From NCBI GenBank assembly GCA_964188305.1, contig OZ076885.1: DNA of 64,000 nucleotides. One strand, written 5' to 3'. Shown one piece after another: positions 3,150 through 61,338 of the stretch. Position 1 is the first letter of the stretch, and the number at the start of each line of letters is the position of its first letter. This DNA comes from Podarcis bocagei. Its lineage: Eukaryota. The translations under genes and the position numbers were made by a program. Below the pieces are notes generated by a model that was not told the DNA's origin, did no database searches, and saw only the letters and a program-made list of their open reading frames with translations.

Positions 3150-3434
3150 CTGACGGGGGAGGGCGGTCCATCGCTTTAGGAACATGCGAGACCCCCACAT
3201 CCAAGTCGCGATCGCACCCCCATTTCCCAGCCAGGGGCAAAAAAACGCAGCTAGATCGGCGAGGGGGCTCCAGCCCCAGCCAGGACTCACCTCCGGGGGC
3301 GCGCAGGTGGAGCAGCGCGATGGCCAGCAGGAGCCAGCGGGCAGCTGCACGAGGGGACTCCATTCTCCAGGAGCCGATCCGTTCCCAACTCCGGCTCAGA
3401 TCCCCACTCCCGGCGCTGGGGAGCGCATGTTCGC

Positions 3435-3478
<44 letters not shown>

Positions 3479-3625
3479 GGCAGCCCGGCTCCGCTGCGGC
3501 GCCAAACTCCAGGTGCGAGCGGGCAGTCAGCGCCGCCAGCCGTGCGCGCTCGCCGGTGCGCTGCGCAAGCCGCGCATCCCTGCCCGGGCCGCCGCCGCCG
3601 CCGGGCTGCTCAGCCTCAGACAATA

Positions 3626-3662
<37 letters not shown>

Positions 3663-4050
3663 GGAGGGGACCGGAGCACATGGGATCAGCGCCTTCCCGC
3701 TGCGCCGCTGGGTCCTAAAGCGCCTCTGAGAACCCCCTCGATGACGGGCGACCCAGTGCCCCACTAGCCGCGCCGCGCCGCCCCGGGCCGGCGGGAGAGG
3801 CGCGAAGCTAGCTCCGAACAAGGCGGGGAAAAGGGGCGCGGCGGCGGGAGAGGGCGAGCCGCTGAGCGGATCTGGGAGGCCGAGGGCAGCGAGTGGCATG
3901 GTCAAAACGCGAAGGGGAGGAGGAAATCCAAGAAAGTGGATTCCCGCGAAAGAGCAGGGAGAAGGAAAGGGCGATCGCGGAGGGGACTCTTCCAGGCGGC
4001 TGTTTTATTCGAGCGCGTTGCATTATACAATACAGAACTCTTCGCACACT
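3150..4050. promoter_or_regulatory. CpG island / promoter and 5' UTR of TMEM132A
   Basis: Very GC- and CpG-rich stretch around the signal-peptide exon; contains (TC)n(AC)n at ~3435-3478 and (GGCA)n at ~3628-3660. Confidence 0.7.
3291..3363 (-). CDS. TMEM132A: First coding exon (signal peptide) of TMEM132A; the rest of the gene lies left of the window
   Basis: ATG at 3363 gives MESPRAAARWLLLAIALLHLRAPG+G (73 nt, phase 1), then a GTGAGT donor at 3290-3285. It is a hydrophobic signal peptide inside a CpG island. The gene name comes from synteny (ZP1-PRPF19-TMEM109-TMEM132A, same relative orientations as in mammals), not from strong sequence identity. Confidence 0.7.
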
Positions 4051-5079
4051 TCACTTCTGTTGCTGTTTCCAGTGGTTTCCAACTTTCACCCTTTCGGACA
4101 AGAAAGCGGCCACGCGGATGATGTCTTGAGATGATGAGAAATTCACCGTAGTTTTCCTGAAGGTATCCTGGGAAAATAAAATAAATAATAAATAATTTTT
4201 ATTATTTATACCCCGCCCATCTGCCCCTCCAATGTGGTTAATTTTGAGGCCTGAAGTAAATTTAACAGTTGATATAGGGTGGATTTCCAAGCTTTGTTCT
4301 TTTGAACAAAGCCTTATAGAGGCATGCAAATGGTGTGTCCCCCCACCTTTTAAATTTTAATTTTGCAGGTGACATTATTTCCTATTCACATTAGTTTACA
4401 ACATTTGGATTAGCTGTACAGGGAAATGGCCTGGAGAAGTAGGATTCAGGCAGCACACAAGGGACCTTTTAAATTCAAGACTTCATGCAATCCTAAGAAA
4501 CAGAAAGAACTCTTGTCAGGTTTGATCAAGCCCTCATTTACAGATTTTGACAGCCTGTCATACAACAGAGGAGAATCTACCTAAAACAATTCCCCAGTTC
4601 ACATTAGTCTGACTATATGGAGCCACCACTGTTGAACACATGAGTAAAAAACCAACAGTCTGAACCCACTGAAGTTAGGTGTCAATCGAATGCCAATTCA
4701 AAAGGACTGTTGTTGTTTAGTCATTTAGTCGTGTAGGACTCTTCATGACCCCATGGACCAGAGCATGCCAGACACTCATGTCTTCTGCTGCCTCTCAAAA
4801 GGACTAGCTTGCTTCAACTAAAAGATCAACAGATCCCTCCTCCTTCCACAGGATCTCACTTCTGCCCATGGACAGATCGAGTTCTTGCATTCAAGGAAGC
4901 CTAGTTAACACTTGATCCACTTCCCCAGTATGTTGAAATCCACACACACACCACATGAAATCAGTGGAACTTAACATTTGAGCAAATGTGCATAGGATTG
5001 CTCTGCACAATTTCCTTTTTGCAGAAGGGAAAGTGAGGCTGACACTCAGCTGCAGTGTATGATTTGAGGTAGAATAAGG

Positions 5080-6653
5080 CAGTTTCCCAACCGGTGTTCT
5101 GCGGCACACTAGTGTGCCGCGAGACGTTGCCTGGTGTGCCGTGGGAGGGAGGCGGGGCGGCGGCGGCGAGGAGAGGCCGCCCAGCGCGGGGCTCTCGCCG
5201 TCTGCCTGCCTGGCTGCCTGCGTGGCGCTGACGTCACGGGGCTGTAACGTGCCCCACATAGGCACACGCGGGGCGGCGAGCGAGCTCCCTCCCACATCCC
5301 ATCGCCGGCTCTGCACCAGGCGGTAGAGCTTGGCGAAGTCGCCACGCTGGAAGGCCAGCAGCGCGCGCGCCTTGGCCAGGCTCTCGCCCGCCTGCGCCTC
5401 CAGGCACGGCGCCTCGGCGTCAGCGAGCCCAGGAAGCGGCCCAGCCGGCCGGGGTCGCCCGCCTGCAGCAGCGCCTCGCACACGCACGAGACCTGCTCCG
5501 CCGAGAAGCGCGGCGAGCGCGGAGGATCGGGCGCAGCGGAGGCCAGCCCTGCGCTTGGAGAGGACGCAGCAGCCATCGCCAAACCCGATCCTCCTCCTCC
5601 TGCTCCGCCGCCGTCCTCTGGCTCTCGGCCGGGAGGAGCCTGCAGCGACGGGGCGGGCGCCGAAGTTGGCAGAAGTTGGCGCGCCTCCTCGGCAGCGCCT
5701 TCGTCCTCCTCCTCCTGCCTCTGCTCTCCTCCGGCGGCGGGGGCGCGCCGGCCGGGGGGCTCGGCGGGGCCCGCGGGGAAGGAGGCCATGTTCGCGCCGC
5801 GTGGGATCGCGGCCCCCCTCGCCCGCCTCCGGCCCGCTCCCCTCCCCCTGCGCGCTGCCCTAGCCGTGCGGGTCTCCTCCCCCTGCGCCGCCGTCCCCTT
5901 TCCACATCCTAGGAGCCGCGGTCCGCCTACCGCCCCCGGGCCGCGGCGCGGCTCCCAGCCCGGGCTGGCCTCCGCCTCCTGGGACGCGCGGCCACCCCCG
6001 CGGCCCCCCAAACTTCGGAGCAACTCTCCAGACGCTTCTCCCCCACCTCGGTCTCCCTCCTTTCCACTTCTCTTCCCCCCTTCCTTTCCTCTTTCTTTCT
6101 CTTTCTCTCCCACCCGCCTTTCCTTCTATTAACTTTCCTTTCCCCTCCCTTCGTCCTTCCTACTTTTACTCCTGGGCTCCTCCCCCCTTTGCGCAGCCAC
6201 AAATCAATCTCTCTCTCTTTTTTCCCCTCTCTCTCTTCTTTGCTCAGACGCAAAAAAGCGCCGCTTTTTGGAAATCCGGACTGCTGTCCCCGCTGAAACG
6301 ATACTTTAAAAAAGGAAGAACCCACTGGCTCTTATTTCTGTTTAAAGCAGTAGATCCCGAACTCTTTTGGCCCACTGCCCCCTTGGTTCCACATCCCCCA
6401 GTGTCCCCTATGCTTACTCTATAGAAAGCATTACAGGGGTTAACGCGGCTCGCTAAGGAAGATATTAATAGAATTCTGCATTTGGGGGGAGACCCTAACA
6501 GTCATCTACCATTACCTTCTATGCTGTTACTATTTTTTAATTTTTTTTTACATAAGTAAAAAGTGACCTTTCCCCATCTGGCATGGTGGTGTGCCTCGAG
6601 ATTTTTTTCATGAAACAAGTGTGCCTTTGCCCAAAAAAGGTTGGGAAACACTG
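5080..6653. mobile_element. Non-autonomous hAT (Charlie-like) DNA transposon carrying a captured SIX5 fragment (Pack-TIR)
   Basis: Left end CAGTTTCCCAACC at 5080. Right end GGTTGGGAAACACTG ends at 6653 (reverse complement CAGTGTTTCCCAACC). Perfect 8-bp TSD GAATAAGG at 5072-5079 and 6654-6661. Subterminal GTGTGCC/GGCACAC motifs at both ends. No transposase ORF. Confidence 0.9.
5305..5789 (-). pseudogene. SIX5: Truncated, frameshifted copy of SIX5 exon 1 (N-terminus plus first half of the SIX domain; no homeodomain)
   Basis: ATG at 5789: MASFPAGPAEPP...EEEDEGAAEEARQLL...RFSAEQVSCVCEALLQAGDPGRLGRFLGSL. After a frameshift near 5420 it continues ...GESLAKARALLAFQRGDFAKLYRLVQSR. This matches SIX5-type motifs (EEARQLL; FSPEQVACVCEALLQAG; ARALVAFQRGEYAELYRLLESR). 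Similarity stops abruptly at ~5305. Confidence 0.88.
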
Positions 6654-7438
6654 GAATAAGGGCTCAGGATTTTGTTTTCAAAACCACTGCTGAGTCCTGG
6701 AACAGGCAAAGCAACAATGGAGAAAATACCTCTGAGCGTTTGCAGAATGCATCTCTCTCACCACTAAGTAACCTCTGCCATTTAGGATTAAGGAGTTTAG
6801 AATTAAGGAACAGGATTTCCAGAGTTGCTGAGACGGCTCCCGGGCAGACTTTATCACCATTCCATTTAGTCTGAAAATCAGAAAGCCTTGGAGATAATAT
6901 TTTCTCCAAGGCCATCAAGTGAGTTCTGTGGCGTGTAAGTTGAGACCTGAATGTCTTTCAGAAGTCAGGCATGCACCAAAATGTGAGAGTCCTTCTGTTC
7001 ATATTACCAGCCAGCCAGGCTCTTTGCCAGGAAACACTATTGCATTCCATCTCAATAGGTTTCTGTAAAGTGGCTTTTGTTTTTTGTACTTATGCAAACC
7101 TCAGAGTCTCCCTGAACTTGCTAATGCCTTCCTTTTATGAGTGGGTTGTGCCATTTTGGCTAACTAAAGATAGGCAGTCCGAGAAGGCATTTAGGATGCC
7201 TTCATTTGCTCTGGCAATGCTGGCTCACATACCTCTACTAGTCCTTATAAACAAAAATGGAATCTCCTTACTCAGAGGCAGTAGACCTCACATCCCCACC
7301 TGCAGGGAAGAAACAAAGAGGTATGGCTGCCCCCAAAATGGCCTACTTCTGAGTTTCCTTGGGGCAAGAGATTGGCCACTGCTGGAACCAGAGTACTACT
7401 AGCCACAACTGCTGTGCTTCACATCCACTGCCAGAGAC

Positions 7439-30900: not shown

Positions 30901-33900
30901 TTATTATACTTCTACGGACTTTCAAAGATTGACAGACCTGTGTTCATTTGTTTTCAAATGTATCAGAGAGTTTACAAGTATACACATTTTGTTTTTGTTG
31001 TACTAAATCATGTATATTATGCAATAAGAATTACAGTGCTATCTGGTATACTGGTCTTTGTGTTGTTTGTTGTGTTAAGTTTGCAACACAGGGGTTTGTT
31101 GTTCTGTAAAGATCAGTTACTATGCTGATGTGCTTCCTTAGGATGCTGTCATGCTGCACAGTTTCACGCTACGCCAGCAGCTGCAAACTACACGTCAGGA
31201 ATTGTCCCATGCACTATACCAGCATGATGCTGCCTGCCGTGTCATTGCCCGTCTCACCAAAGAGGTCACTGCTGCGAGAGAAGGTAAAGACTCAGAAGAT
31301 GATATGTTCTTTGGGTGGTGTCCAGGGAAGCTGCCCACAGTGCCAGCTTTAACCTGTCAAACCTTTTCTCTCTCTCTTTCCAGCTTTGGCAACTCTGAAA
31401 CCCCAGGCTGGCCTCATCGTTCCCCAGGCTGTACCTTCTTCACAACCCAACGCTGTGGTAAGTCACACACATATGTATCGGTCAGTAATTCTCTTTGTGC
31501 TCTGTCTTTCTTCTCTGGGCTAATCATGCTCTTCGTTGTCTTCCTGCAGGGTGCTGGTGAACCAATGGACTTAGGAGAGCTGGCTGGAATGACCCCAGAG
31601 ATTATCCAGAAGGTAAGAAATATCCCTGGCTTGCTCTTTGCCATCCAGATCATGCTATAGCTATACAGTTACAATCTCCCAATCTGAGCTCTATAGCTGG
31701 CTTTGTCGGTAGGAACATGCCACTTCCACACTGTTGTGCCTTCCCTTTCTACATTACGGCTGCAGTGTCTAACAGGACAATCAGTTGCAGCTTTTTCCAC
31801 TCTCCTGCTTTTTGGGAATCACTGATAGCACCCTGGCTGGCAGAGCAAGCAGAAAAGGGTGGGCAGACAGATGCAATAGCCTCTTCTCTGTCCTGGGGCC
31901 ATTCCCCAGCAGCAACAGGCAAAAAGCAGAGTGGGTCAGCAGCATTGTCCCCTGCTTATTGATGTGCTAGCATACCATGCTTGAAGCTGGCTTCTCCTAA
32001 TGCTGTTCTGTTTTGCAGCTTCAAGACAAAGCCACGGTGCTGACCACGGAGCGTAAAAAGGTGAGTGCCCCTATCTCAATATTTGCTCTACAGGTGGGGA
32101 AGCACTGAGTTATCCAGGGGTGCTTGCAGTATGTTTGTTCTCATGATTGCTGCAAAGGTGCAACTCCCTGTGCTAGGATGCTCCTGTTACAAGGAGTTTA
32201 GTTCTATGTTGTCTTTTTGGCAGAGAGGGAAGACCGTGCCGGAGGAGCTGGTGAAGCCGGAAGAACTCAGCAGGTACCGGCAGGTGGCTTCACATGTGGT
32301 GAGTATGGTGATCATAATTTATTGGGAAGGCTACCATGAAGGAATCATCTCATTTAAGCCGAACACTTCCTAGGTTTTACCAAAAATACTGTTGAGCATC
32401 CTCTCTCCATCTGAACTACTCTGCACTAGCTATCCATTGATCTAAGCCAGGGGTAGAGAACCATGACAGGCTACTTTGACAGATGGGCAGGATTCCACTC
32501 ACCTGTCAATCACCTGATGTCAGGTGACAAGCAAGACTTGAAATCACCACTGTCCGGTGCTGACTTGAAATCTGCTTTCTGTATGGGTCACCCAATGCTG
32601 GAGGGCATGCTGTCACCACCTACCATCTGATACATGATGACAGCAACCCTTCTTTGCCAATGAACAATTAGGAGTACACTTTAAGGCTCTCTATTGTGAA
32701 TTGGAAGCTGCATCTCTGCCTGCCTCACACCTGATCTCTTATATGCCAGGCTTGGACTGGAGGTTTTCCTTGTCCTCTGGAAGTTTAACCATACAGTGGT
32801 GCCCCTCAAGACGAATGCCTCGCAAGACGGAAAACCCGCTAGACAAAAGGGTTTTCCGTTTTTGAGCTGCTTCGCAAGACGATTTTCCCTATGGGCTTGC
32901 TTTGCAAGATGAAAATGTCTTGCGAGTGTTCCGATTTTTTTCCGCTTCCCCCCCTCTTTTTCTAAGCCACTAAGACGCTAATAGCCTTTTAGCCGCTAAT
33001 CCGCTAAGCCTTTAATAGCCGCTAAACCGCTAATAGCGCTATTCCGCTAAGCCGCTAATAGGGTTGCTTCGCAAGACGAAAAAACCGCTAGACGAAGAGA
33101 CTCGCGGAACGGATTAATTTCGTCTTGCGAGGCACCACTGTATTTTGCAACATGCTGGCCTGGAGTGTGAAGGCTCTGAGCTCTTGGACCTCTGTTGCCT
33201 CCTCCAGCCTTTCCAAATTAACAATACTTGCTGCTTTTGCGGCCGAGACCAAACTGGTGTTGCTCTTTGCTACCAGCTTCTCGCTTGATTCTGGAACAGC
33301 TTCAAGCTCATTTACCATTTGATTGCACAAGGAAGTAATTATTAATACCAGGATCACCACCGTTCTTTCATTACCGTTGCTGTGGGCTTGGAGCCAAGTC
33401 TGCAGATTCCTGTCAAATCATGAGGAAAGACTGTTCTATCAGGGATACAAATTGGGAAAAGTTTGGGATCAAGCCAAGTGTTTGCAGACACTCCTCTTGT
33501 ATAAGATGAGTCGTTTTGCTTGACTCTTGTTGAGATGAAGCAGTAGGCCCTCTCTCATCCTTTGCACTGAAACGTTAATGTCAACGTTAATGTTGCTTTT
33601 GCACAGGGACTACACAGTGCCAGTATTCCTGGCATCCTTGCTCTCGACTTGTGTCCTTCTGACACCAACAAGATCCTCACAGGTATGTTAAGACTTCTGT
33701 TTCAGTTCCTTTCCTGAGTAAAGTGTTAGGACAGTTTGAGCCAATGGGGTCCTTTGCTCTCTTCAAAAGCCACTTCTTCTCCTTTGGTTCCGTGCTTGGG
33801 TTTGCATGTAGGTATGGGCAGATCAACCTATTTTCATTCCGGGTTACTTTTGCTTGTGGTTGATCTTGGGTCTATCCTGTCTGGGGTTTTGTAGATTAAA

Positions 33901-36900
33901 ATGAAACTACAAAAACATTTCAGATATTATATACATTTGTCCTGTAAAGTACTCATTTCTGTATGCTTTCCAATGCATTTCTCCCTAAAATACTCATTTT
34001 TCTATGAATTTTGTTTTTGCAATGCATGAGTCCCAATACAAGATGTGCTGAAGGAGTGTAGGGCGCTCTCCTTCACTGGGCCTTTGTGGTCTTTTTGTTT
34101 TCTAGGTGGAGCTGATAAGAATGTTGTTGTCTTTGACAAGACCTCAGAGCAGATCCTGGCGACACTGAAAGGTCACACCAAGAAGGTCACCAGTGTAGTC
34201 TTCCATCCTTCCCAGGTAAAGACTGTCTTTTGTTGCCTGCCCCATTCCCTCCACCCCATGCCCATTATTTATATTTATTAAAATATTTAATATAACTTTA
34301 GCGTGTTGTTGAATTTCCTCTGCAGTTGCCTGAAACAACTGTATTATCTCCCTTGAGGTCCCCTTATAGATAGAGAATGCACTCCATAGGTCATCTCTTG
34401 AGCTGATGATTAAGGACACAACGGTTCTGAATTCAATAAACAAAGCTCTTGTTTCAGCCTAACTCTTCGGGCTTTATTTGCTCTCCCCTGCAGGAACTGG
34501 TGTTCTCGGCTTCGCCAGATGCTACTATCCGGATCTGGTCAGTCCCCAGTGTTTCATGTGTGCAGGTTGTGCGTGCCCATGAGAGTGCCGTGACAGGGTT
34601 GAGTCTCCATGCCACAGGCGATTACCTACTGAGCTCCTCTGATGACCAGGTGAGATCAAAACCAGAGGTGGTCAGGCCCAGACTGTGTTAACTGTAAAGC
34701 TCTTCATGCTAAAATGACATCTGCAAAATGTGAAGCTGCACTTGCTTATTTGCTTATTAGCTTTATTTTAAACATTTCTATCTCATTTTTTAACATAACA
34801 ATTCTTCCAAAGTGGTTCACACTTTAGAGATAACAATTAATAAAACAATCTAGTTCACAATGAAAAGGTACAAACATTGACATTTTTTAAAAAAATCCAA
34901 AACATAAAACAGCAAGGATTAGTCAAAGCAAGCTTTCCAGAAGAGACATTTTGCCATATACAAACCCTCCACCTTTCCTCTCTTTCAGTATTGGGCTTTC
35001 TCCGACATCCAGACCGGCCGTGTTCTCACCAAGGTCACAGATGAAACTTCTGGCTGTGGTAGGGGCTCTGCATTTGGTATTTTGGTGAAACTTGCTTGGG
35101 CGAGGGGAGAGTCTGCATGTTTAGTATGGTTTTGTTTCGCCATAATGTTAAACCATAGTTTAGTGTTCTGAGAACAAGCATAGCTTTCCTCCAGCCTTGT
35201 TCACTCCCCTTCCAGTACAGCCTCAAGGAGGAATCCAAAAACCGCTGCTTCTGGTTTTTGTGTAACCACAGCTTGCAGTGTTGGCTGAACCTGGACAAAC
35301 CGAGTTGTCATGACTGTGGTTAATGGAAACAAGTTAATATCAAGTAATAGTTTATTTGCTTATTTCAACTGAGCTTATTTAAGGTTAATCACAGTTTAGC
35401 ATGTTGCACAAACTCTAAACTGTGGTTAATCTAAACCAGAAGTGGCAGCTTCTAGTCTACTTATGATTGCACTGGGGAAGAAGGGAGACTTGCGATGAGC
35501 CTTGTGCAGAGGGCTAGGCTCATTCTCATAAAGCTGAACTATAGATTAGCGTCATTCCCAAGCACAGCTCATTCCACCCACATGGGTGGAAGAAGGCTGG
35601 GTAGGGACTTCATTTCCCTATAGGAATGGCTTACTCTCAGCTTTGTGATGATTCACTATCTCCTTTCTCTGCAGCGCTGACCTGTGCCCAGTTTCATCCT
35701 GATGGGCTTATTTTTGGGACAGGAACAATGGACTCTCAGATTAAGATCTGGGACTTGAAGGTGAGAAAAGGCTTGGAATATTGAGCTTCTTCATGATATC
35801 TACCTTAAGGATAGCTGATGATGTTATGTGACACATATAGAATATTCCAAAGTGCTTTATAAATGCTGATTCCTTCTCCATATTGTTGAATGAGAAATTG
35901 CATAAAAGCTAGGCTTGCACAGTCATATGAGATCTCAAAAGCCTGCTCTGCAATAACTCAGAACAGGGCTTTTGACATGACTGTCCCAGTTCTGTGGAAG
36001 AGCATTCCTGTTGAGATATGACAGCCACACGCTATCTGCACTTTTTGGGAAAAATGGAAGACATTTGTGTTCCAACAGGCTTTCCCAGGTGGATAAATGG
36101 GTATTTGCCAGGAATGTCTACTTGTTAGGGTTTTAGTCTTGTTTTAAATGTATATGTTGTTTTTGTTGTTTTAACTGCTTTTGATTATATTATGTATACC
36201 GTATTTTTCGCCCTATAAGACGCACTTTTTCCGCTCCAAAAATGAAGGGGAAATGTGGGTGCGTCTTATGGGGCGAATGCAGGCTTTCGCTGAAGCCTGG
36301 GGAGCGAGGGGGGTCCCTCGCACCGACCCCTCTCGCTCTCCAGGCTTCAGGAAGCTATCCGCTAGCTGTGGGAGACCCAGCTCTCCCAGGGCTAGCGGAG
36401 AGCTTGCCGGCACCCAGAAGCTTGGGGCGCGCTGAACCTCAGCACGCCCCAAGCTTCGGGATTAGCGCAGCGGTCCGCTAGCCCTGGGAGAGCCGCGCGG
36501 CTCTCCCAGGGCTAGCGGACTGCTTGCGCGCACCCAGAAGCTTGGGGCGCGCTGAGCTCCGCACGCCCCAAGCTTCGGGATTAGCGCAGCTGTCCGCTAG
36601 CCCTGGGAGAGCCGCGCGGCTCTCCCAGGGCTAGCGGACTGCTTGCCGTCACCCAGAAGCTTGGGGCGTGCTGAGCTCCGCACGCCCCAAGCTTCGGGAT
36701 TAGCGCAGCGCACCTGGGGGGGAAATAAATTCCCCCCCCCTTTATTTCCCCCCCAAAAAACTAGGTGCGTCTTATGGGCCGGTGCGTCTTATGGGGCGAA
36801 AAATACGGTAAATTGCCTTGAGACAGTGGTTTAGAAAGTAATTGATAGACATTGATTATAATGGTACTAATATGAGCAAGGAATACTCAAGAGGTGCTAC

Positions 36901-46300: not shown

Positions 46301-49300
46301 ATTGCATGTCCTATAAATTCCTGTTGAAATCCCGGGTCTCTCTTCATACCATAAATGTTATGAGTTTTGTTGCTGCTTTATAGGCCCCTCCAGACAGCAA
46401 TAATGTGGTAGCATCAGGGAAGCACCACAAAGCAACATGAAACCATCACTAGTGCACTATTATTGTGTCAATAACATGTTACAAAATACACCCGCAATAA
46501 AAGACTAGCCTGGAGGAGCCTTTAAGCAGTACTATACAGTGGTACCTCTGGATGCGAACGGGATCTGTTCTGGAGCCCCATTCGCATCCAGAAGCGAACA
46601 CAATCCGCGTCCGCGGGTGCACGGGTCGCAATTTGCCGCTTCCACGCATGTGTGATGTCATTTTGACTGCATGTGCAAGCGGCGAAACCCGGAAGTAACG
46701 CGCTCCATTACTTCCCCGAAAACACTTATCCCGAAGCTACTTCAACCCGAGGTATGACTGTATAGTATCCTGGTTCGTGATGCTTTGAACTGTGCTGGAT
46801 ACATATTCATCCTGCTAGCCTCTGGATTCTCAGCAGTAGCCAGCACAAGATAGAATCCCAGTGTGGCTTTTAGTGTCAGGTGTATTGAACTCAGCATGGC
46901 TGGGAGTTCATCTGTAGGAGTTTTTAAACCATGATACTGGAGAGGAGTAGTTAGAGTGCTTTGCTCCTCCCCCCAGCCAACCTGCTGTGCTACCTGGAGC
47001 TACGCCATGATTTTGCTTAGCATGACATCTAAATGCAGGCTCATGGTTTCTATTGATCTAGAGAAGACACAAGCGGTAGCCAAGGTTTGTTCCTGGCTTG
47101 CTGCCTGTGGGTTGGGGCAAACCATGAGCCCTGGTTCAGATGCAATGCTAAGCCAAAAGCCATGATTCAGTAGCAGCAGAACAACTAGGGAAGGAGTGAA
47201 TTGGCTGCATTTTTTTACTGTGAACAACCGCTTATACATCCATGCTTAGCCATTGTTTGGTTTAGCATTATATGCAAACCGGGCTATTATTTCCTTAGTA
47301 CAAGAGATAAGTCCCCTTGGTAAATGAATCATTACCATGGTTGCCAGCCTAATTCACCACCAGCACGCCAGACAATTAGCAGGAAACTAAAAGAAACAAA
47401 GTATTTTGCCCTTTACCTGTGTTGCCATAGTAACATGGAGTAGTTTGGTCCCTCTCATCATAACAGCATCCAGTCTGGTAACATTCAGCTTGTCCTAGTG
47501 AACCTGCACAGGGAATCTTTCCAGATGAAACCTGGCACTGCTCCTGCGTTAGAGGAGAACCTGGGAGGGCAAGAAAAGAGCTACAGCGTTACCTGGAGCA
47601 TGATAAAGTATGCCCTATTAGGACTGGCTAGCATGCCACGTTAAGCCAGATTTTAAAATAAGCAATAGCTTGATGTGAATGCGTAGTGGGTCAGTCCCGG
47701 CAATGAACAAGTGGGAAAGCAAGAACAAATATTTTTTTGTGTCCAATGAATCATTAAAGGAAGTAGAATGCTCTTTTTAAAGGAACTAAAGGTCTCTCCT
47801 AGAAGCTTATCAGATATTCAGAGGCAGAAATAGATCACATTCTTCATATACTTGAATCCATGCTTCATCCTTGCCCATGTGGTATAAATATAACACAGTT
47901 TCCCTGACACTCCATATGCGGAATTAGTATGCAATACTAAATCAAGAAAGTCGATGATCAATCAATAGTCTGAATTTTATGAAGAACAACTATTACACAA
48001 TACCCATTACTATTACACAATACCCATCAGTATTATTTACTTAGTTCAGAATGCTTCTGTTTTACTTAACAGCACAGATCACAGAGTTGTGCTTAATGAT
48101 AACATAGCAAAATGATCACATACCTATACTGTAGAGGCCAGAAGGGTGCATGAGGCCAGGATAGAGAGGAGGCACTGGTTGCACAAGGCCGGGCTGAGGC
48201 AGCGGGCGCACTTGGCCAGGCTGAGGCTGAGGAAGCGGGCGCACTTGGCCGGGCTGAGGCTGAGGCATTGCGTGCCCTTGGCCAGGCTGAGGCTGAGGCA
48301 GCGGGCGCACTTGGCCGGGCTGAGGCAGTGGGCGCACTTGACCAGGCTGAGGCTGCACTTCACCAGGCTGAGGCTGAGGCCATGGGTGCACTTGGCCAGG
48401 CTGCGGCGGAGGCCGTGGGCGCACCAGGCCGGGCTGAGGTTGAGGCTGAGGCAGCGGGCGCACTAGGCCGGGCTGAGGTTGAGGCAGCGGGTGCACTTGG
48501 CCGGGCTGAGGTTGAGGCAGTGGGCGCAGTTGGCCGGGCTGAGGCAGTGGGTGCACTTGACCAGGCTGAGGCTGCACTTCACCAGGCTGAGGTTGAGGCC
48601 ATGGGTGCGCTTGGCCGGGCTGCGGCGGAGGCTGTGGGCGCACCAGGCCAGGCTGCGGCTGAGGTTGAGGCAGCGGGTGCACTTGGCCGGGCTGAGGTTG
48701 AGGCTGAGGCAGCGGGCGCACTTGGCCGGGCTGAGGTTGAGGCAGCGGGTGCACTTGGCTGGGCTGAGGTTGAGGCTGAGGCAGCGGGCGCACTAGGCCG
48801 GGCTGAGGTTGAGGCAGCGGGTGCACTTGGCTGGGCTGAGGTTGAGGCTGAGGCAGCGGGCGCACTAGGCCGGGCTGAGGTTGAGGCAGCGGGTGCACTT
48901 GGCCGGGCTGAGGTTGAGGCTGAGGCAGCGGGCGCACTAGGCCAGGCTGAGGTTGAGGCAGCGGGTGCACTTGGCCGGGCTGAGGTTGAGGCAGCGGGTG
49001 CACTTGGCCGGGCTGAGGTAATGGGCGCACTTGGCCAGGCTGAGGCTGAGGCTGAGGCAGCGGGTGCACTTGGCCAGGCTGAGGCTGTGGCAGCGGGCGC
49101 ACTTGACCAGGCTGAGGCTGCCCTTGACCAGGCTGAGGTTGAGGCCATGGGTGCGCTTGGCCAGGCTGCGGCTGAGGCCGTGGGCGCACCAGGCCGGGCT
49201 GCGGCTGCACTTCGCCTGGCTGAGGCTGAGGCCATGGGTGTCCTTGGCTGGGCAGCGGCTGAGGCAGTGGGTGCACCTGGCCGGGCTGAGGCTGAGGTTG

Positions 49301-52300
49301 AGGCAGCGGGCGCACTAGGCCGGGCTGAGGTTGAGGCAGCGGGCGCACTTGGCCGGGCTGAGGCTGAGGTTGAGGCAGCGGGCGCACTTGGCCGGGCTGA
49401 GGCTGAGGTTGAGGCAGCGGGTGCACTTGCCCGGGCTGAGGCTGAGGCAGCGGGTGCACTTGCCCGGGCTGAGGTTGAGGTTGAGGCAGCGGGCGAACTA
49501 GGCCGGGCTGAGGCTGAGGTTGAGGCAGCGGGCGCACTAGGCCGGGCTGAGGCTGAGGTTGAGGCAGCGGGCGCACTTGGCCGGGCTGAGGCTGAGGTTG
49601 AGGCAGCGGGCGCACTAGGCCGGGCTGAGGCTGAGGTTGAGGCAGTGGGCGCACTTGGCCGGGCTGAGGCTGAGGTTGAGGCAGCGGGTGCACTTGGCCG
49701 GGCTGAGGCTGAGGCAGCGGGTGCACTTGCCCGGGCTGAGGCTGAGGTTGAGGCAGCGGGCGAACTAGGCCGGGCTGAGGCTGAGGTTGAGGCAGCGGGT
49801 GCACCTGGCCGGGCTGAGGCTGAGGCAGCGGGTGCACTTGGCCGGGCCGAGGCTGAGGCAGCGGGTGCACTTGGCCGGGCTGAGGCTGAGGTTGAGGCAG
49901 CGGGCGCACTAGGCCGGGCTGAGGCTGAGGTTGAGGCAGCGGGCGCACTTGGCCGGGCTGAGGCTGAGGTTGAGGCAGCGGGCGCACTAGGCCGGGCTGA
50001 GGCTGAGGTTGAGGCAGCGGGCGCACTTGGCCGGGCTGAGGCTGAGGTTGAGGCAGCGGGCGCACTAGGCCGGGCTGAGGCTGAGGTTGAGGCAGCGGGC
50101 GCACTTGGCCGGGCTGAGGCTGAGGTTGAGGCAGCAGGTGCACTAGGCCGGGCTGAGGCTGAGGCAGCGGGTGCACTTGCCCGGGCTGAGGAAGAGGTTG
50201 AGGCAGCGGGCGCACTAGGCCGGGCTGAGGCTGAGGTTGAGGCAGCGGGTGCACTTGGCCGGGCTGAGGCAGCGGGTGCACTTGGCCGGGCTGAGGCTGA
50301 GGCTGAGGCAGTGGGCGCACTTGACCAGGCTGAGGCTGAGGCAGTGGGCGCACTTGGCCGGGCTGAGGCTGAGGTTGAGGCAGCGGGTGCACATGGCCGG
50401 GCTGAGGATGAGGCAGTGGGTGCACTTGGCCAGGCTGAGGCTGCGGCTGTACTTCACCGGGTTGAGGCTGAGGCTGAGGCAGTGGGTGCACTTGCCCAGG
50501 CTGAGGCTGAGGCAGCGGGCGCACTTGGCCGGGCTGAGGCTGCGGCTGTATTTCGCCGGGTTGAGGCTGAGGCTGAGGCAGTGGGCGCACTAGGCCGGGC
50601 TGAGGGTGAGGCAGCGGGTGCACATGGCCAGGCTGAGGCAGCGGGCGCACTTGGCCAGGCTGAGGCTGCGGCCATGGGTGCACTTGGCCAGGCTGTGGCT
50701 GAGGCAGTGGGCGCACTAGGCCGGGCTGAGGTTGAGGCAGTGGGCGCACAAGGCCGGGCTGAGGCTGAGGTTGAGGCAGCGGGCGCACTTGGCCGGGCTG
50801 AGGCTGAGGCAGTGGGTGTATTTGGCCAGGCTGAGGCAGCGGGCGCACTAGGCCCGGCTGAGGCTGAGGCAGTGGGTGCACTTGGCCAGGCTGAGGCAGC
50901 AGGTGCACTTGGCCGGGCTGAGGCAGCGGGTGCACTTGGCCGGGCTGAGGCAGCGGGCGCACTTGGCCGGGCTGAGGCTGAGGCAGTGGGTGCACTTGGC
51001 CAGGCTGAGGCAGTGGGCGCACTAGGCCGGGCTGAGGCTGTGGCAGCGGGTGTACTTGGCCGGGCTGAGGCTGAGGCTGTACTTTGCCAGGCTGAGGCTG
51101 AGGCAGTGGGCGCACTTGGCCTGGCTGAGGCCACGGGTGCACTATGCCAGGCTGGGGCTCTGGGCGTATCAGGCTAGGTACTGGATGCTCTAAGCCAGGC
51201 TGGGGCTTAGGCTGGGGCTGCGGGCGCAACTGGCCAGGCTGAGGTTGAGGCTGTGGGCGCACTATGCCAGGTTGGGTTTCTGGGCGTATTAGTCCAGGCT
51301 GCGGTCGCACTATGCCAGGTTGGGTTTCTGGGCGTATTAGGCCAGGCACTGGACGCTCTCGGTCAGGCTGGGGCTGAGGTTGTGGGCGCACCTGGCTGGG
51401 CCAAGGCTGAGGCAGTGGGAACTCTAGGCCAGGCTGGGAATGAGGCAGAGGGCGCGCCGCGCCAGGCTGGGGCTGAGGCACATGACGCATGTTGTCCTCT
51501 GGTGCTGGGACATATTCTTGTGGCTTGGGGCATATTATGTTGACATCATGGGAGACAACAACTCTTCTGTTGCTTGTTAGTTCCTCTATCCGGACTTTCA
51601 AGTTATTGCTGTTATCCTGCAAGATGCATTGAACCAGAATGTTATAGAGTAGTTGCAAGTTTCTGACACATTGATGAGTCAGGACGGATATAGAATACTG
51701 AGGTTTTAGAGTCAAATACCAATGTACCTGTTACAAGGCATTATCATAGTCTTGCTATGACATATGAATCTTGTTTTGATAATAAATTTAAATTTATTTG
51801 GCCGAATACCGACTAAGCTAGTGTACTGGATTGCTAGGTACCAGGTGAAAAGCATCCTCCTAAAACATCTAAAAGCTCATCTTAAATGTCTATACAACAG
51901 AGCTAATTTTCCTGACAGAGGATTTCTGCTGCAGTAGTTGGCCAAGATGATGGGCAGGATACAACTAAGCGGTGTGCATGGCATGAGGTCCAATTACTCA
52001 ACAGGACTTTGCCTGCGCTCCTTCCCCTCGTGGATCTTGTTCCCCTTGGGCTTCACTGAGTTCTACACCCTGGTTTTAGGCTGTTCAGTTCTCTACTGCA
52101 CATGTTGCTATACTTTGGAAGACAATTCTACCCTTTCTTATACTTGGACTTTCTGCATAGCCAGCTATTTGCAAAATCACTAAAGCAAAAATCAGAAGTG
52201 ACCAGGGAACCTGGTGAACCTGTGCCTCTCAAATGTTGCTAGGTTCCAGAGGTAGCTATAAATGTAAAAACTAAACCCAGCCAGCATGTCTGATGGAAAC

Positions 52301-57261: not shown

Positions 57262-58870
57262 CTAAGTTCCAGTCCTGCCCGGGAGGTCGCATTCATAGTC
57301 CTCGAGGTACGCCGGCGGCCTACGTGTGCGTTGCGGCCTGTGGTGTTCCCTGGTCCGGGGTTCAGGTTCTGGCTCGTGTTCCAAGGATGCTGGCTGTGAT
57401 GGGCCTGTTTGGTTTGGCGCAACCGGCTCGCTCAGTCGTGGTTCTGGTTCCGGTGTCCTTTCGGCCTCGCGGGTCCTCTCTGTATTTACTGGTTCTGCCT
57501 CTCCTGCTGGCCCCTCCTGTTCTATGGGCCTCACCGCCCCTCTGTTCCCTTGGGACTCCTCTAACCTTTCCTCCTCCTGGTTTTCTCCTGGGAATCGTCG
57601 CCATATCTGGTCGCAGTGGCGGCGCCAGCATTGCCCCCCATCCGTTAGCACCTCGTACGACACAGGGCCAGTGACCCTGGTGACTGTGGCGGGTACCCAT
57701 GCTGGGCCTGCCCCAAAATTCTTTGCGTACACTGGGTCCTGGGCCTCGAAGGTCCGGGGGTTCCTGCCTTCCCCCACCACTACCTCATCCTGAGCTCTAT
57801 CGGGGTGAAGGCGGTCCAATCTGATTGCAAGGCGCCGACCCATTAGTAGTTCAGCGGGGCTCTGGCCAGTCGTTGAGCTGGGGGTGCTGTGCTGTGCTAA
57901 GAGGAATGTGGCAAGGCGGTACTCCCAATCCCCTTGCATCATGCGGCGAAGGGTGTCCTTGGTGGTCCGCACCATGCGTTCTGCTTGGCCATTGGTGGCA
58001 GGGTGGAATGGCGCCGAACGGATGTGGCGGATGGCGTTCTGCGCTGTGAAGGTTTGGAATTCTCCTGACGTAAATGCAGTCCCATTGTCTGAGACGAGAG
58101 TGTCAGGGAGCCCGTGGGTTGCAAACAGCCTGCGTAGTACCCGGATGGCTGCGGATGTAGAAGTGGACGGTACCAGTGCGACTTCCAGCCATTTGGTGTA
58201 GGAGTCCACCACTATGAAGAATGTTTTCCCCTGAAAGGGGCCAGCGAAGTCCACATGCAGGCATGACCATGGTGCTCGGGCGGACTCCCAGGACTGGACT
58301 GGGGCCCTTGGGGGATCTGGGCGGGATTCTTGGCAGGCCTGGCAGTGTTTGACCCAGGCCTCTATCTCTCCGTCGATCCCTGGCCACCACACATAACTTC
58401 TGGCAAGGGCCTTCATTCTTACTACCCCTGGGTGTGTCTCGTGTAGGGCTGTGAGGACCCTTTTGCGGAGGGGCTGGGGAACAACGACCCTGCTTCCCCA
58501 TAACAGGCACCCCTTGTGGGCCGACAGTTCATGTTTGTGGGTTGTGTAGCCAGTGAATTCTGGCCCAGGGCTGCTGCTGGGCCATCCCCTCCACACCCAG
58601 TCCAGGACCCGGGAGATGACCCTATCTTTCTTGGAATGGTATGCAACTTCTTGTGCCTGAATGGGGCGGTCGGGAAGCAGCTCCAGGCTCATAACCTCTT
58701 GTGCAGGTGCTGGGTCGGGGCCTGTTTCCGGTAGTGGTAGCCTGCTGAGGGCGTCCGCATGGCCCATTGCCTTCCCCGGGCGGTGAATCAGTGCATACTG
58801 GTAGCTGGCAAGGAAAATTGACCACCTGAGGACGCGAGGAGACAGCACTTGGGGGGTCTGCTTTTCGGGG
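57262..58870 (-). pseudogene. Gypsy integrase segment
   Basis: HHCC zinc finger (LHETHPG...CQAC), DDE core (HVDFAGP, SDNGTAF, NGQAER) and a GPY/F-like GPVSY module. Confidence 0.9.
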
Positions 58871-60045
58871 GGCAAATAAGCCAAGCAACGGCTTGTGGTC
58901 AGTCACCACGGTGAAGGGCCGCCCGTACAAGAAATCATGGAATTTTTTTACTCCCTTCACGATTGCCAGACCCTCCTTGTCTATTTGCGAGTAGTTCCGC
59001 TCGGTTGCGTTGAGTGTCTGGGAAAAGTATGCCACCGGTACCTCTCTTCCATCCGGGAGTTGGTGTCCCAGGACAGCGCCAATGCCATAGGGCGAGGCGT
59101 CGCATGCTAGCACCACTGGCAGCCTCTCGTCGAAGTGTGCCAAGACCGAGTTTGAGACAAGCAAGTCCTTGACTGCCTGGAATGCAGCCTCCTGGCGCTG
59201 GCCCCACACCCAAGTGGCCCGCTTGTCCAGGAGTCTGTGTAGGGGCTCTGCTACCGCTGCCTTGTGGGGAAGGAAGGAATGGTAAAAGTTCAATAGTCCC
59301 AAGAAGGCCTGAAGTTCAGTCTTGCTCTTGGGCGCTGGGGCATCACAAATGGCCCGTACCTTGTCCCCAGTCGGGTGGACCCCTTCTGCGTCCACCATAA
59401 ATCCCAGAAAGTCCACCTGAGGCACTCCTAGTAGACATTTTTCCCGCTTCACCTTGAGACCCGCCGTCTGGAAACGGTGCAGAACGGTGCGGAGGCGGTC
59501 CTCAAACTCCTCTGGTGTGGGCCCGGCAATCAGCACATCATCGAAGAAGGGGGTGACGCCAGGAATCCCTTTAAGGAGCGAGTCCATTAGATTCTGGAAT
59601 GTGCCTGGTGCCACACTGACACCGAATTGCAGCCGCTTTACCCTGAATGCTCCTCTGTGCGTCACAATCGTCTGTGCCTCTGCTGTGGCCTCATCTACTG
59701 GCAGCTGTTGATATGCTTGGGCCAAGTCCAGCTTGCCAAAAATTTTCGACCCAGCCAGGGTGGCAAGGACATGGCTGACCACTGGCACTGGGTATGCATG
59801 GGCCGTGAGGGCCTTGTTTATGGTACATTTGTAGTCTGCGCAGATGCGGACCGAACCATTAGGCTTGACGGGTGAGACGATTGGGGTTTCCCAGGGGGCA
59901 TTAGGCACTGGCTCCAGCACTCCTTGCTCCACGAGCCGGTCCAATTCCTCGTCTATACGGGGTTTCAGGGCGAACGGGACCCGGCGGGCCTTAAGCCTGA
60001 CCGGTCGTACTGCGGGGTCAAGCTGTAGAGCAATGGGGGGGCCGT
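58870..60045 (-). pseudogene. Gypsy reverse transcriptase / RNase H segment bounded by frameshifts
   Basis: RICADYK, LDLAQAYQQ, LQFGV, FFDD, CDASPYGIGAVL, RNYSQIDKEGLA and TDHKPL motifs. Confidence 0.9.
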
Positions 60046-60228
60046 ATACTGTCCCAATTTCCCATCAAAAACCCCTGGAAATTCCTTGCAGATGGCGTCC
60101 ACGTCCACTTGTAAGGTAGTGTGGTTCACCCCGGTGATGGCTAGCCCCAGTGGTCCAAACCATGCCAATCCCAGTAAGCTAATGTAGGGGCCCTTGACCA
60201 CGAGCAAGTCCAGTTGCCGCGTCCGCCC

Positions 60229-61338
60229 TCAGTATTGCACCCTGAAGGTCCCCACCCCCATTGTGGGGACCTTACGTTTCTGGAAGTCCCGGAGGGTGAA
60301 TGGGGCCGGCCTGAGTTTGGGACCCCCAGTAGGACACAGTTTCCTTAAGGTCCTTGCCGAGATTATGGATAGAGTTGAACCCGTGTGAAGCTCCATGCGG
60401 CATGGGGCCCCCTCTATCTGTACCTCTACATAAATTTTCTCTACATTGGGGTGGGGCAACTGGTATACCTGGAAGTCCGTGAGCTCCGTAGAGTTGCCTT
60501 GGTGCGTTGGGCCCCGGGACCTGGGGCTCTTGGATTGGTCATCTGATGCCTGGCATTGGGTGGGCCGAGCTCGACACACCCGGGTGATGTGTCCCAATTT
60601 TCTGCACTGCCTGCACTCTGCGTTGCGGAAACGGCAGGTCCTCCTCTCGTGACTTTCCCCGCAGCTTGCACAGTTCCCTCCTTCTCGTCGAGGCAGCTGT
60701 GGTATGTGGGCTGCTTGAGTGCGCTGCTGTACTCGGTGCACCTCCTCCCTGTCAGATCCTGAGTCGTCGGTGAGGTCTTCATGGTGGACCCTCGGTTGGG
60801 GTGGCAGGCTCGGCCGTGCCTCTTGCGTCGACCTCTCGGCAGCTTCCGTTGCCAGGGCCTCCTCCAGAGCGACCTGGAACGTTAGGTCCTTCTTGGCGTA
60901 GAGGCGTCGTTGCAGCTTCTCATCCTTCAGGCCACCGACGAGGCGGTCACGAAGCATGTTCTCCAGCTCTGAGAAGTTGCAGAACCGGGCAGCTTGGCGG
61001 AGAGAGGTCACAAACCCAGTTATGGTTTCCCCAGGGGCTTGCCGCTTTGTGTAGAAGGCATTTCGACGAGCCACAACTGAGGGCTGTGGCGAAAAGTGCC
61101 CCTTCAGCTGTTCCATTATTGTTTTGTATGGAACAGTAGCGACGTCTTCAGGTGCAAGGAGAGCCCGGGCGATTTCAAATGTCTCCTCTCCGCAGATGCT
61201 GAAGAATATTGCCCTCTTCTTGGCGTCTTCTTCATCGGTGACCCCTTTGGCTTCTAGAAGGAAGGTGAAACGGGAGGCGTACGCTTCCCAGTCTCCAGAT
61301 GCTGGGTTGAACGGCGAGAAGCTGCTGTTGGTTGCCAT
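60229..61338 (-). pseudogene. Gypsy gag plus protease (premature stop; catalytic D replaced by H)
   Basis: Zinc knuckles CASCGESHERRTC and CRQCRKLGHITRVC. Protease motif reads ELHTGS rather than D(T/S)G. In-frame TGA at 60231-60229, with the frame continuing into ORF 59965-60207. Confidence 0.88.

What the first reader, a model, noticed from the sequence alone, without database searches (positions are those of the whole stretch)
5072..6661. Pack-hAT: a DNA transposon that has captured and moved the 5' end of the homeobox gene SIX5
Seen: hAT-type TIRs (CAG[TG]TTTCCCAACC), subterminal GTGTGCC motifs and a perfect 8-bp TSD (GAATAAGG) enclose ~1 kb of GC-rich cargo. The cargo encodes the SIX5 N-terminus and half of the SIX domain, plus ~550 bp of putative upstream/5' UTR sequence. 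Known: in mammals SIX5 lies next to DMPK, not in the ZP1-PRPF19-TMEM109-TMEM132A block. Gene-fragment capture by TIR transposons is common in plants (Pack-MULEs) and much less documented in vertebrates. Inference: a TSD around the whole unit fits transposition with the cargo already on board, so a multicopy SIX5-carrying family may exist in this lizard genome. Gap-filling into an element already resident here is the alternative.
Basis: partly seen in the sequence, partly recalled or inferred. Interest (0 to 1): 0.92.

Follow-up and report, generated by a model that had tools for sequence, protein, structure and literature searches.

The report
hAT transposon carrying SIX5 gene start
A small non-autonomous hAT DNA transposon in a wall-lizard (Podarcis) genome carries 1.2 kb copied from the promoter and first exon of the homeobox gene SIX5. 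A second copy at another site shows it moved with this cargo on board, which is a known but rare event in vertebrates.

Summary
A perfect 8-bp target-site duplication (GAATAAGG, 5072-5079 and 6654-6661) abuts hAT-type inverted ends (5080-5092 and 6639-6653). GTGTGCC motifs cluster near both ends. The interior, 5304-6508 on the minus strand, is one colinear 1,205-bp copy of the lacertid SIX5 locus: 719 bp upstream of the ATG plus 486 bp of coding sequence, with identical limits against four lacertid SIX5 loci. It covers SIX-domain profile positions 1-70 of 113. A 7-bp deletion shifts the frame, and no homeodomain lies anywhere in the window. The window holds a PRPF19 exon, so this is not the SIX5 locus.

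A Podarcis muralis database protein (P0001) turned out to be a read-through ORF of a second copy. It has the same cargo, the same SIX5 breakpoint, the same left arm and a full terminal repeat, then an unrelated flank. So the family has at least two copies and moved with its cargo. Capture happened after Podarcis split from Zootoca.

This is a new member of a known kind (Pack-TIR, Tan et al. 2021), in which multicopy vertebrate cases are rare. Unchecked scan notes report another SIX5 copy and many other cargos in hAT elements of this genome. Not shown: an empty site, the autonomous partner, transcription, or whether this copy is the founder.

The parts
5072..5079 (.). Left target-site duplication, GAATAAGG
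   Evidence: Identical 8-mer at 6654-6661, directly abutting both terminal repeats
5080..5092 (+). Left terminal inverted repeat, 13 nt. It lacks 2 nt (TG) compared with the right end and with the other copy
   Evidence: 11-nt perfect inverted core with 6639-6649 (I19). P0001 encodes the full end as ..VGKHW
5080..5303 (+). Left arm of the transposon (224 bp): terminal repeat, subterminal GGCACAC/GTGTGCC motifs at 5103, 5112, 5134 and 5261, and a GC-rich stretch (5141-5303) of unassigned origin that holds a TGACGTCA site
   Evidence: No match in any of the four SIX5 loci. Shared with the P0001 copy, with 72/73, 7/7 and 14/16 residues identical in the stretches that could be mapped. Motif counts
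5304..5789 (-). Captured SIX5 coding fragment: ATG at 5789-5787, N-terminus and SIX-domain positions 1-70 of 113. A 7-bp deletion between 5422 and 5421 shifts the frame. Homology stops after ..LVQSR
   Evidence: Pfam SIX1_SD. 96% identical to the P. muralis SIX5 N-terminus. DNA alignment to L001 10001-10517
5790..6508 (-). Captured SIX5 5' UTR and upstream (promoter / CpG-island) sequence, 719 bp
   Evidence: Colinear with L001 9276-10000 and with the same stretch in L002, L003 and L004. CpG observed/expected over the whole cargo is 0.91, against 0.94 in the parent
6509..6653 (+). Right arm of the transposon (145 bp, AT-rich), with GTGTGCC at 6589 and 6619
   Evidence: No match in the SIX5 loci. 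Motifs
6639..6653 (-). Right terminal inverted repeat, CAGTGTTTCCCAACC when read inward
   Evidence: 15 of 16 positions match the terminal repeats of Anolis hAT-N3_AC and SPIN_NA1_AC
6654..6661 (.). Right target-site duplication, GAATAAGG

Best explanation
Window 5080-6653 is a non-autonomous hAT-superfamily transposon of the Pack-TIR (Pack-hAT) type. Its two short arms (224 and 145 bp) carry the terminal inverted repeats and repeated GTGTGCC motifs, which a hAT transposase supplied in trans would bind. Between the arms, where a transposase gene would sit, lies one contiguous 1,205-bp genomic copy of the SIX5 locus, running from about 720 bp upstream of the ATG to codon ~165, inside the SIX domain. 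The fragment was copied once, in a Podarcis ancestor after the split from Zootoca. Inferred: this happened by template switching during repair or replication of a hAT element. The chimeric element was then mobilised by cut-and-paste transposition, which makes 8-bp target duplications, giving at least two copies at different sites. The copy here landed in the PRPF19 region. It has since decayed: a 7-bp frameshift, a 2-nt loss in the left terminal repeat, and CpG-to-TpG changes. It cannot make a SIX-domain protein. Shown: the ends and TSD, the origin and limits of the cargo, a second copy with the same junctions, and the decay. Inferred: the capture mechanism, mobilisation in trans, and any promoter activity of the cargo.
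For: TSD, terminal repeats and motifs. The end sequence CAGTG fits the hAT YARNG rule (my own knowledge) and matches Anolis hAT-N3_AC and SPIN_NA1_AC repeats at 15 of 16 positions (PMC3014272). Cargo: 5304-6508 aligns colinearly with P. raffonei L001 9276-10517 at 95.7% identity excluding gaps, with 51 mismatches and 10 indels. The limits are the same against the P. muralis, P. lilfordi and Zootoca loci. No terminal-repeat or arm sequence occurs in the parental loci. The window has no further SIX sequence and does have a Prp19 exon. Second copy: P0001 maps to window 6125-5098 in stretches of 98/101, 12/14, 97/102, 72/73, 7/7 and 14/16 identical residues. It has the same break (..QSR then RWDVGG..), reads through a complete terminal repeat, and continues into an unrelated flank. 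It shares 2 derived post-capture residues with this copy and lacks 4 changes private to this copy. Timing: 55 sites are derived in the cargo and all three Podarcis parents relative to Zootoca, and none is derived in the parents only. In the tree the cargo sits inside Podarcis. Decay: 10 CpG deamination changes in the cargo against 1 in the parent.
Against: Only one other copy was seen, and only as a protein, so its DNA, TSD and right half are unknown. If that gene model is spliced, its 'flank' could be another exon, although it reads without interruption through the last base of the terminal repeat. No cargo-free member of the family and no autonomous hAT were available, so the arm-cargo borders rest on where SIX5 homology ends. 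The 163-bp GC-rich part of the left arm is unexplained. The TSD fits the NYYTARRN preference of the similar Anolis families at only 4 of 6 specified positions. No empty orthologous site was examined. The species of the window is not established.
Confidence: 0.85

Rival explanations
1. This copy is the founder. A cargo-free hAT element already sat at this site with this TSD, and the SIX5 fragment was copied into it by transposition-independent gap filling after a double-strand break. The other copy or copies derive from this one.
For: Tan et al. find that most animal Pack-TIRs arise this way. With only two copies documented, either could be the founder. This copy holds the longest cargo seen here: P0001 covers only up to window 6125.
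Against: The family is demonstrably multicopy. Scan note s1-352228 (unchecked) reports another copy in this genome, so most copies must be transposed ones. This copy carries 4 private substitutions, a frameshift and a damaged terminal repeat that P0001 lacks. These show later decay but do not exclude founder status.
Confidence: 0.2
2. An ordinary segmental or retro-duplication of SIX5, a SIX5 pseudogene, or an assembly chimera that happens to be flanked by a chance inverted repeat and direct repeat.
For: Chance pairs of an 8-bp direct repeat and an 11-nt inverted core occur at about 0.1 per 64-kb window in shuffles, which is not negligible across a scan of many windows.
Against: The ends match a described lizard hAT terminal repeat at 15 of 16 positions. 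The subterminal motifs are about 30-fold enriched. The same terminal repeat and arm adjoin the same SIX5 breakpoint in an independent copy. The cargo includes upstream non-coding DNA, ends inside exon 1 and has no poly(A), so it is not a retrocopy.
Confidence: 0.02

Closest known systems
Multicopy Pack-TIRs of vertebrates, e.g. Pack-hAT-N8_XT carrying the CAPSL 5' UTR in Xenopus tropicalis (Tan et al. 2021, PMC8277862)
   Same: A non-autonomous hAT with terminal repeats and 8-bp TSDs. The cargo is a GC-rich 5' gene fragment copied from an unlinked parent. There is more than one copy at different sites.
   Different: Different host (a lacertid lizard; the text search of that paper found no 'lizard', 'Anolis' or 'reptile'). 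The cargo is larger (1,205 bp against 291 bp) and includes upstream/promoter sequence, the start codon and about 165 codons of a homeobox gene. The number of copies and their TSDs are not yet counted.
Pack-MULEs of rice (as summarised in PMC8277862)
   Same: A terminal-repeat transposon carrying host gene fragments, with a bias towards GC-rich 5' ends and multicopy members with distinct TSDs.
   Different: Mutator superfamily (long terminal repeats, 9-11 bp TSDs) against hAT. Plants against a vertebrate.
Anolis carolinensis hAT-N3_AC and SPIN_NA1_AC (Novick et al. 2010, PMC3014272)
   Same: The 16-nt terminal repeats differ from this element's (CAGTGTTTCCCAACCT) at one position each. 8-bp TSDs with a central TA preference. 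Non-autonomous.
   Different: Only the terminal repeats were compared, because the internal sequences of those families were not available. Those families are not reported to carry host gene fragments (one search found no such wording).
The genuine SIX5 gene of lacertids (P0176, P0277, P0183, P0275, P0276)
   Same: The first ~165 codons and ~720 bp upstream are 95-97% identical.
   Different: The real gene encodes 921-929 aa (1,013 in the P. lilfordi model) with a full SIX domain and a homeodomain, and in P. raffonei lies next to another SIX gene. Here the copy is cut inside the SIX domain, frameshifted, bounded by transposon ends, and sits in the PRPF19 region.

Membership tests
hAT superfamily, non-autonomous element | 8-bp target-site duplication | tested here: met
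   Perfect GAATAAGG on both sides
hAT superfamily, non-autonomous element | Short terminal inverted repeats beginning YARNG | tested here: met
   CAGTG..., 13 and 15 nt with an 11-nt perfect core. 15 of 16 positions match the Anolis hAT-N3_AC and SPIN_NA1_AC repeats. The YARNG rule is from my own knowledge.
hAT superfamily, non-autonomous element | Repeated subterminal motifs (transposase binding sites) | tested here: met
   6 of the 12 GTGTGCC/GGCACAC sites in the window lie in the element. Binding itself was not tested.
hAT superfamily, non-autonomous element | A cognate autonomous element encoding a hAT transposase with the same ends | not testable with these tools
   None in the window or in 102 kb of lacertid loci. 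Scan note s1-345158 claims autonomous copies elsewhere in this genome (unchecked).
Pack-TIR / Pack-hAT (criteria of Tan et al. 2021) | The internal sequence is a copy of host DNA whose parent lies elsewhere and is not linked to the transposon | tested here: met
   1,205 bp colinear with the SIX5 loci of four lacertids, which hold no terminal-repeat or arm sequence. The window is the PRPF19 region.
Pack-TIR / Pack-hAT (criteria of Tan et al. 2021) | Terminal repeats and TSD flank the whole unit, and there is no transposase gene | tested here: met
   Arms of 224 and 145 bp plus the 1,205-bp cargo account for all 1,574 bp.
Multicopy (transposed) Pack-TIR | Two or more copies with the same cargo junctions but different flanks and TSDs | tested here: inconclusive
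   P0001 shows a second copy with the same junction and a different flank, but only at protein level. Its TSD was not seen. Note s1-352228 is unchecked.
Functional SIX5 gene or paralogue | Complete SIX domain plus homeodomain in one open frame | tested here: not met
   Only profile positions 1-70 of 113, a frameshift, and no homeodomain anywhere in the window.
Processed retrocopy | Starts at the transcript start, lacks upstream DNA, and has a poly(A) tail | tested here: not met
   719 bp upstream of the ATG is included. The copy ends inside exon 1 with no poly(A).

The most novel reading that the evidence does not exclude
This element may be one member of a prolific hAT family specific to Podarcis or the lacertids, with a single cargo slot that has repeatedly picked up CpG-island promoter and first-exon fragments from many genes. 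Unchecked scan notes name SIX5, PACS1, SPR, GNAL-XL, CDK5R2 and others. That would be a vertebrate counterpart of rice Pack-MULEs, scattering portable CpG-island promoters next to other genes.
Probability: 0.4. Interest if true: 0.8.

Novelty: new member of a known kind. Interest (0 to 1): 0.55.

Why it matters
Gene-fragment capture by DNA transposons is a recognised route to new exons, promoters and chimeric genes. In animals almost all known cases are single-copy, made without transposition. Tan et al. found only four multicopy cases in 100 genomes (three in frog, one in alligator). A lizard hAT that mobilised 1.2 kb of a developmental gene's promoter, start codon and 5' coding sequence adds a clear multicopy vertebrate case with an identified parent and a datable capture. 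If the other scan notes hold, it points to a genome where the capture mechanism could be studied across many events. The cargo still looks like a CpG island (observed/expected 0.91), so it could act as a transplanted promoter near its new neighbours. That is testable with existing Podarcis RNA-seq and methylation data.

Tried and rejected
- **Other family members.** I searched the window and four lacertid loci (166 kb in all) with the terminal-repeat pattern and by BLAST of the arms. Nothing was found, so the arm-cargo borders could not be checked against a cargo-free element.
- **Exact-protein look-ups.** Look-ups were blank for P0001, two ORFs of the element, P0176, P0182 and two retroelement ORFs of the window. 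So I have no DNA of the second copy, no independent assembly of the junctions and no direct identification of the species.
- **Protein searches for more copies.** Two searches returned only P0001.
- **Scan look-up by sequence.** Blank.
- **Horizontal transfer.** I considered it because the cargo groups with P. lilfordi SIX5 (7 shared derived sites; bootstrap 69; AU p = 0.037, group named after seeing the tree) while the other copy is in P. muralis. I set it aside. Across the rest of the SIX5 locus the three Podarcis alleles support all three pairings about equally (36, 40 and 33 sites). Reticulation among these lineages is also documented (PMC8114931).
- **Apparent SIX5 homology beyond 5304.** The tblastn extensions to 5236-5245 are not supported by the DNA alignment.
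Full report
**1. What is in the sequence**

The 8-mer GAATAAGG occurs at 5072-5079 and again at 6654-6661. Directly inside these lie inverted ends: CAGTTTCCCAACC at 5080-5092 and, read inward, CAGTGTTTCCCAACC at 6639-6653. They share an 11-nt perfect core, and the left end is 2 nt shorter.

The heptamer GTGTGCC and its complement occur 12 times in the 64 kb. Six of these lie in the element (5103, 5112, 5134, 5261, 6589, 6619), against 0.096 per kb elsewhere.

A scan of the whole window for an 8-bp direct repeat abutting an 11-nt inverted core finds only this element, apart from a palindromic tandem repeat at 36.4-36.7 kb. Randomised sequence gives about 0.1 hits per window. That is not negligible on its own, but the further evidence below removes chance as an explanation.

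GC content jumps from about 0.43 in the flanks to 0.74-0.81 inside.

**2. The cargo**

On the minus strand an ATG at 5789 opens a reading frame for the SIX5 N-terminus and Pfam SIX1_SD profile positions 1-29. A second frame carries positions 37-70 of 113.

Protein searches led to the genuine lacertid SIX5 proteins of 921-929 aa and to their loci:

| Locus | Species |
|---|---|
| L001 | P. raffonei |
| L002 | P. muralis |
| L003 | Zootoca vivipara |
| L004 | P. lilfordi |

Window 5304-6508 aligns colinearly with L001 9276-10517. That runs from 725 bp upstream of the ATG to +517. Identity is 95.7% excluding gaps, with 51 mismatches and 10 indels. The same two limits recur against all four species.

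So the cargo is one contiguous genomic piece of 1,205 bp: 719 bp of upstream and 5' UTR sequence plus 486 bp of coding sequence. It is cut inside exon 1 just after ..LVQSR. A 7-bp deletion between 5422 and 5421 explains the frame change.

There is no poly(A), and upstream DNA is present, so this is not a retrocopy. tblastn with nine SIX5 proteins finds no other SIX sequence and no homeodomain in the window. The window contains a Prp19-domain exon at 31151. In P. raffonei, by contrast, SIX5 lies next to another SIX gene. This is therefore not the SIX5 locus.

**3. The arms**

What remains is a left arm of 224 bp (5080-5303) and a right arm of 145 bp (6509-6653). Neither matches any of the SIX5 loci.

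The right arm is AT-rich. The left arm has 60 bp of terminal repeat and motifs, then 163 GC-rich bp (5141-5303) that hold a TGACGTCA site and one more GGCACAC at 5261. I could not decide whether this stretch is transposon backbone or a second captured fragment. The extra motif argues mildly for backbone.

**4. A second copy**

The best database hit, P0001, is a 380-aa protein fragment from the UniProt/Ensembl proteome of Podarcis muralis. It is not SIX5. Mapped onto the window, it follows the element from 6125 down to 5098 in six stretches: 98/101, 12/14, 97/102, 72/73, 7/7 and 14/16 residues identical.

It translates the same 5' UTR and the same SIX5 part, here without the frameshift. It has the same breakpoint (..QSR, then RWDVGG..) and the same left arm. 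It then reads ..TPVGKHW, which encodes the complete terminal repeat including the two bases missing here. After that it continues into 17 residues unrelated to this window's flank.

It shares two derived residues with this copy that no parental SIX5 has (at window 6124 and 5929). It lacks four changes private to this copy.

The simplest reading is one capture followed by transposition of the chimeric element, with later independent decay. An unchecked scan note (s1-352228) reports another SIX5-carrying hAT on another piece of this genome. It may or may not be the P0001 locus.

**5. Age and origin**

In a five-way alignment, 55 sites are derived in the cargo and all three Podarcis parents relative to Zootoca. 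None is derived in the three parents alone. So the capture followed the Podarcis-Zootoca split and did not precede the Podarcis radiation.

Gap-free distances from the cargo are:

| Parent | Distance |
|---|---|
| P. lilfordi | 2.74% |
| P. muralis | 4.50% |
| P. raffonei | 4.59% |

The ML tree places the cargo beside P. lilfordi with weak support (69/74). The AU test gives p = 0.037 against a clade of the three parents, but that group was named after the tree was seen.

I do not read this as evidence of horizontal transfer. Over the rest of the locus the three Podarcis alleles support all three pairings about equally (36, 40 and 33 sites). Pervasive introgression among exactly these lineages is documented (PMC8114931; crown Podarcis calibrated there at 18.6 Mya).

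The species of the window was not determined. Podarcis is certain in practice, and P. muralis or a species of the lilfordi group are both possible.

The cargo lineage has accumulated 1.8% change against 0.94% in the lilfordi parent. It shows 10 CpG-deamination changes against 1 in the parent, yet it keeps a CpG observed/expected ratio of 0.91.

**6. Mechanism**

Shown:
- hAT-type ends and an 8-bp TSD.
- Motif-rich arms and no transposase gene.
- A host-derived interior with an unlinked parent.
- A second copy elsewhere with the same junctions.

Inferred from established hAT biology and from Tan et al. 2021:
- A hAT element acquired the SIX5 piece by template switching during repair or replication.
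- The chimera was then cut and pasted by a transposase supplied in trans.

This copy now has a damaged left terminal repeat and a frameshift. It is probably immobile and cannot encode a SIX-domain protein.

Its possible activity as a transplanted CpG-island promoter is untested. I saw a CpG island at 3200-3900, but I did not verify that gene.

**7. Comparison with what is known**

The 16-nt end differs at one position each from the terminal repeats of Anolis hAT-N3_AC (CAGTGGTTCCCAACCT) and SPIN_NA1_AC (CAGTGKTTCTCAACCT). Those families have TSD preferences NYYYRRRN and NYYTARRN (PMC3014272). The TSD here fits NYYTARRN at 4 of 6 specified positions.

The kind of element is known. Tan et al. 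2021 (PMC8277862) report 370 Pack-TIRs in 100 animal genomes, 208 of them on hAT elements. Only four were multicopy (three in Xenopus tropicalis, one in alligator). They note that multicopy ones favour GC-rich cargo. A text search of that paper found no mention of lizards.

This is therefore a new member of a known kind. It stands out for the size and nature of its cargo and for evidence of mobility.

**8. Wider lead, not tested**

The scan holds many unchecked first-reader notes of hAT elements in this same genome with other gene-start cargos. They name PACS1, SPR, GNAL-XL, CDK5R2 and an ARHGEF33-like exon. One note describes 'one cargo slot', one a mosaic cargo, and one autonomous copies. 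My check of the SIX5 case shows that at least one such note is right. If many are, the family would be a vertebrate analogue of Pack-MULEs.

**9. Limits**

- No DNA of the second copy.
- No empty site examined.
- No cargo-free or autonomous relative found.
- No transcription or methylation data.
- No read-level check of the assembly.

Several exact-protein look-ups were blank.

Noticed in passing
window 36380-36710: A tandem repeat of 2.8 copies of a 119-bp GC-rich unit that is itself a near-perfect palindrome. It lies in the stretch of the window that carries the Prp19 exon.
   Followed up: partly
window 48116-51715 (-): A stop-free ORF of 1,199 aa made almost wholly of PQPQPGQV(R/H)PL-type repeats, with long ORFs on the opposite strand as well. 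Not examined.
   Followed up: no
window 57262-61338 (-): An LTR-retrotransposon gag-pol region. The 540-aa ORF at 57262-58884 has integrase domains (Integrase_H2C2, rve). By eye it is followed by a 440-aa reverse-transcriptase/RNase H-like ORF and a 369-aa gag-like ORF with a zinc knuckle.
   Followed up: partly
window 4703-4797: A roughly 90-bp repeat just left of the element has four copies (84-87% identity) in the P. raffonei SIX5 locus L001. It is probably a SINE or other interspersed repeat.
   Followed up: no
L001 29671-30412: In P. raffonei a second gene with a SIX domain and a homeodomain starts about 9 kb downstream of SIX5 on the same strand. Its SIX domain is 74% identical in DNA to window 5418-5499.
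   Followed up: no
P0275 (P. lilfordi SIX5 model, locus L004): The 1,013-aa gene model starts inside the translated 5' UTR and contains an out-of-frame stretch (..GGGELEEEDRVC..) where other lacertids read GGGGSGL... This looks like an annotation or indel artefact.
   Followed up: no
L001, about 4 kb upstream of the cargo-homologous point: P. raffonei differs far more from P. muralis and P. lilfordi there than in the gene itself: 148 sites unite muralis and lilfordi in the first 4 kb of the alignment, against about 3 to 8 per 2 kb elsewhere. This is probably non-homologous sequence or an insertion in one lineage.
   Followed up: no
window 3200-3900: A CpG island (GC 0.67-0.75) with (GA)n/(CA)n and GCAGGCAG-type microsatellites. 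The minus strand has a signal-peptide-like ORF start (MESPRAAARWLLLAIALLHL..). It had no Pfam hit.
   Followed up: partly
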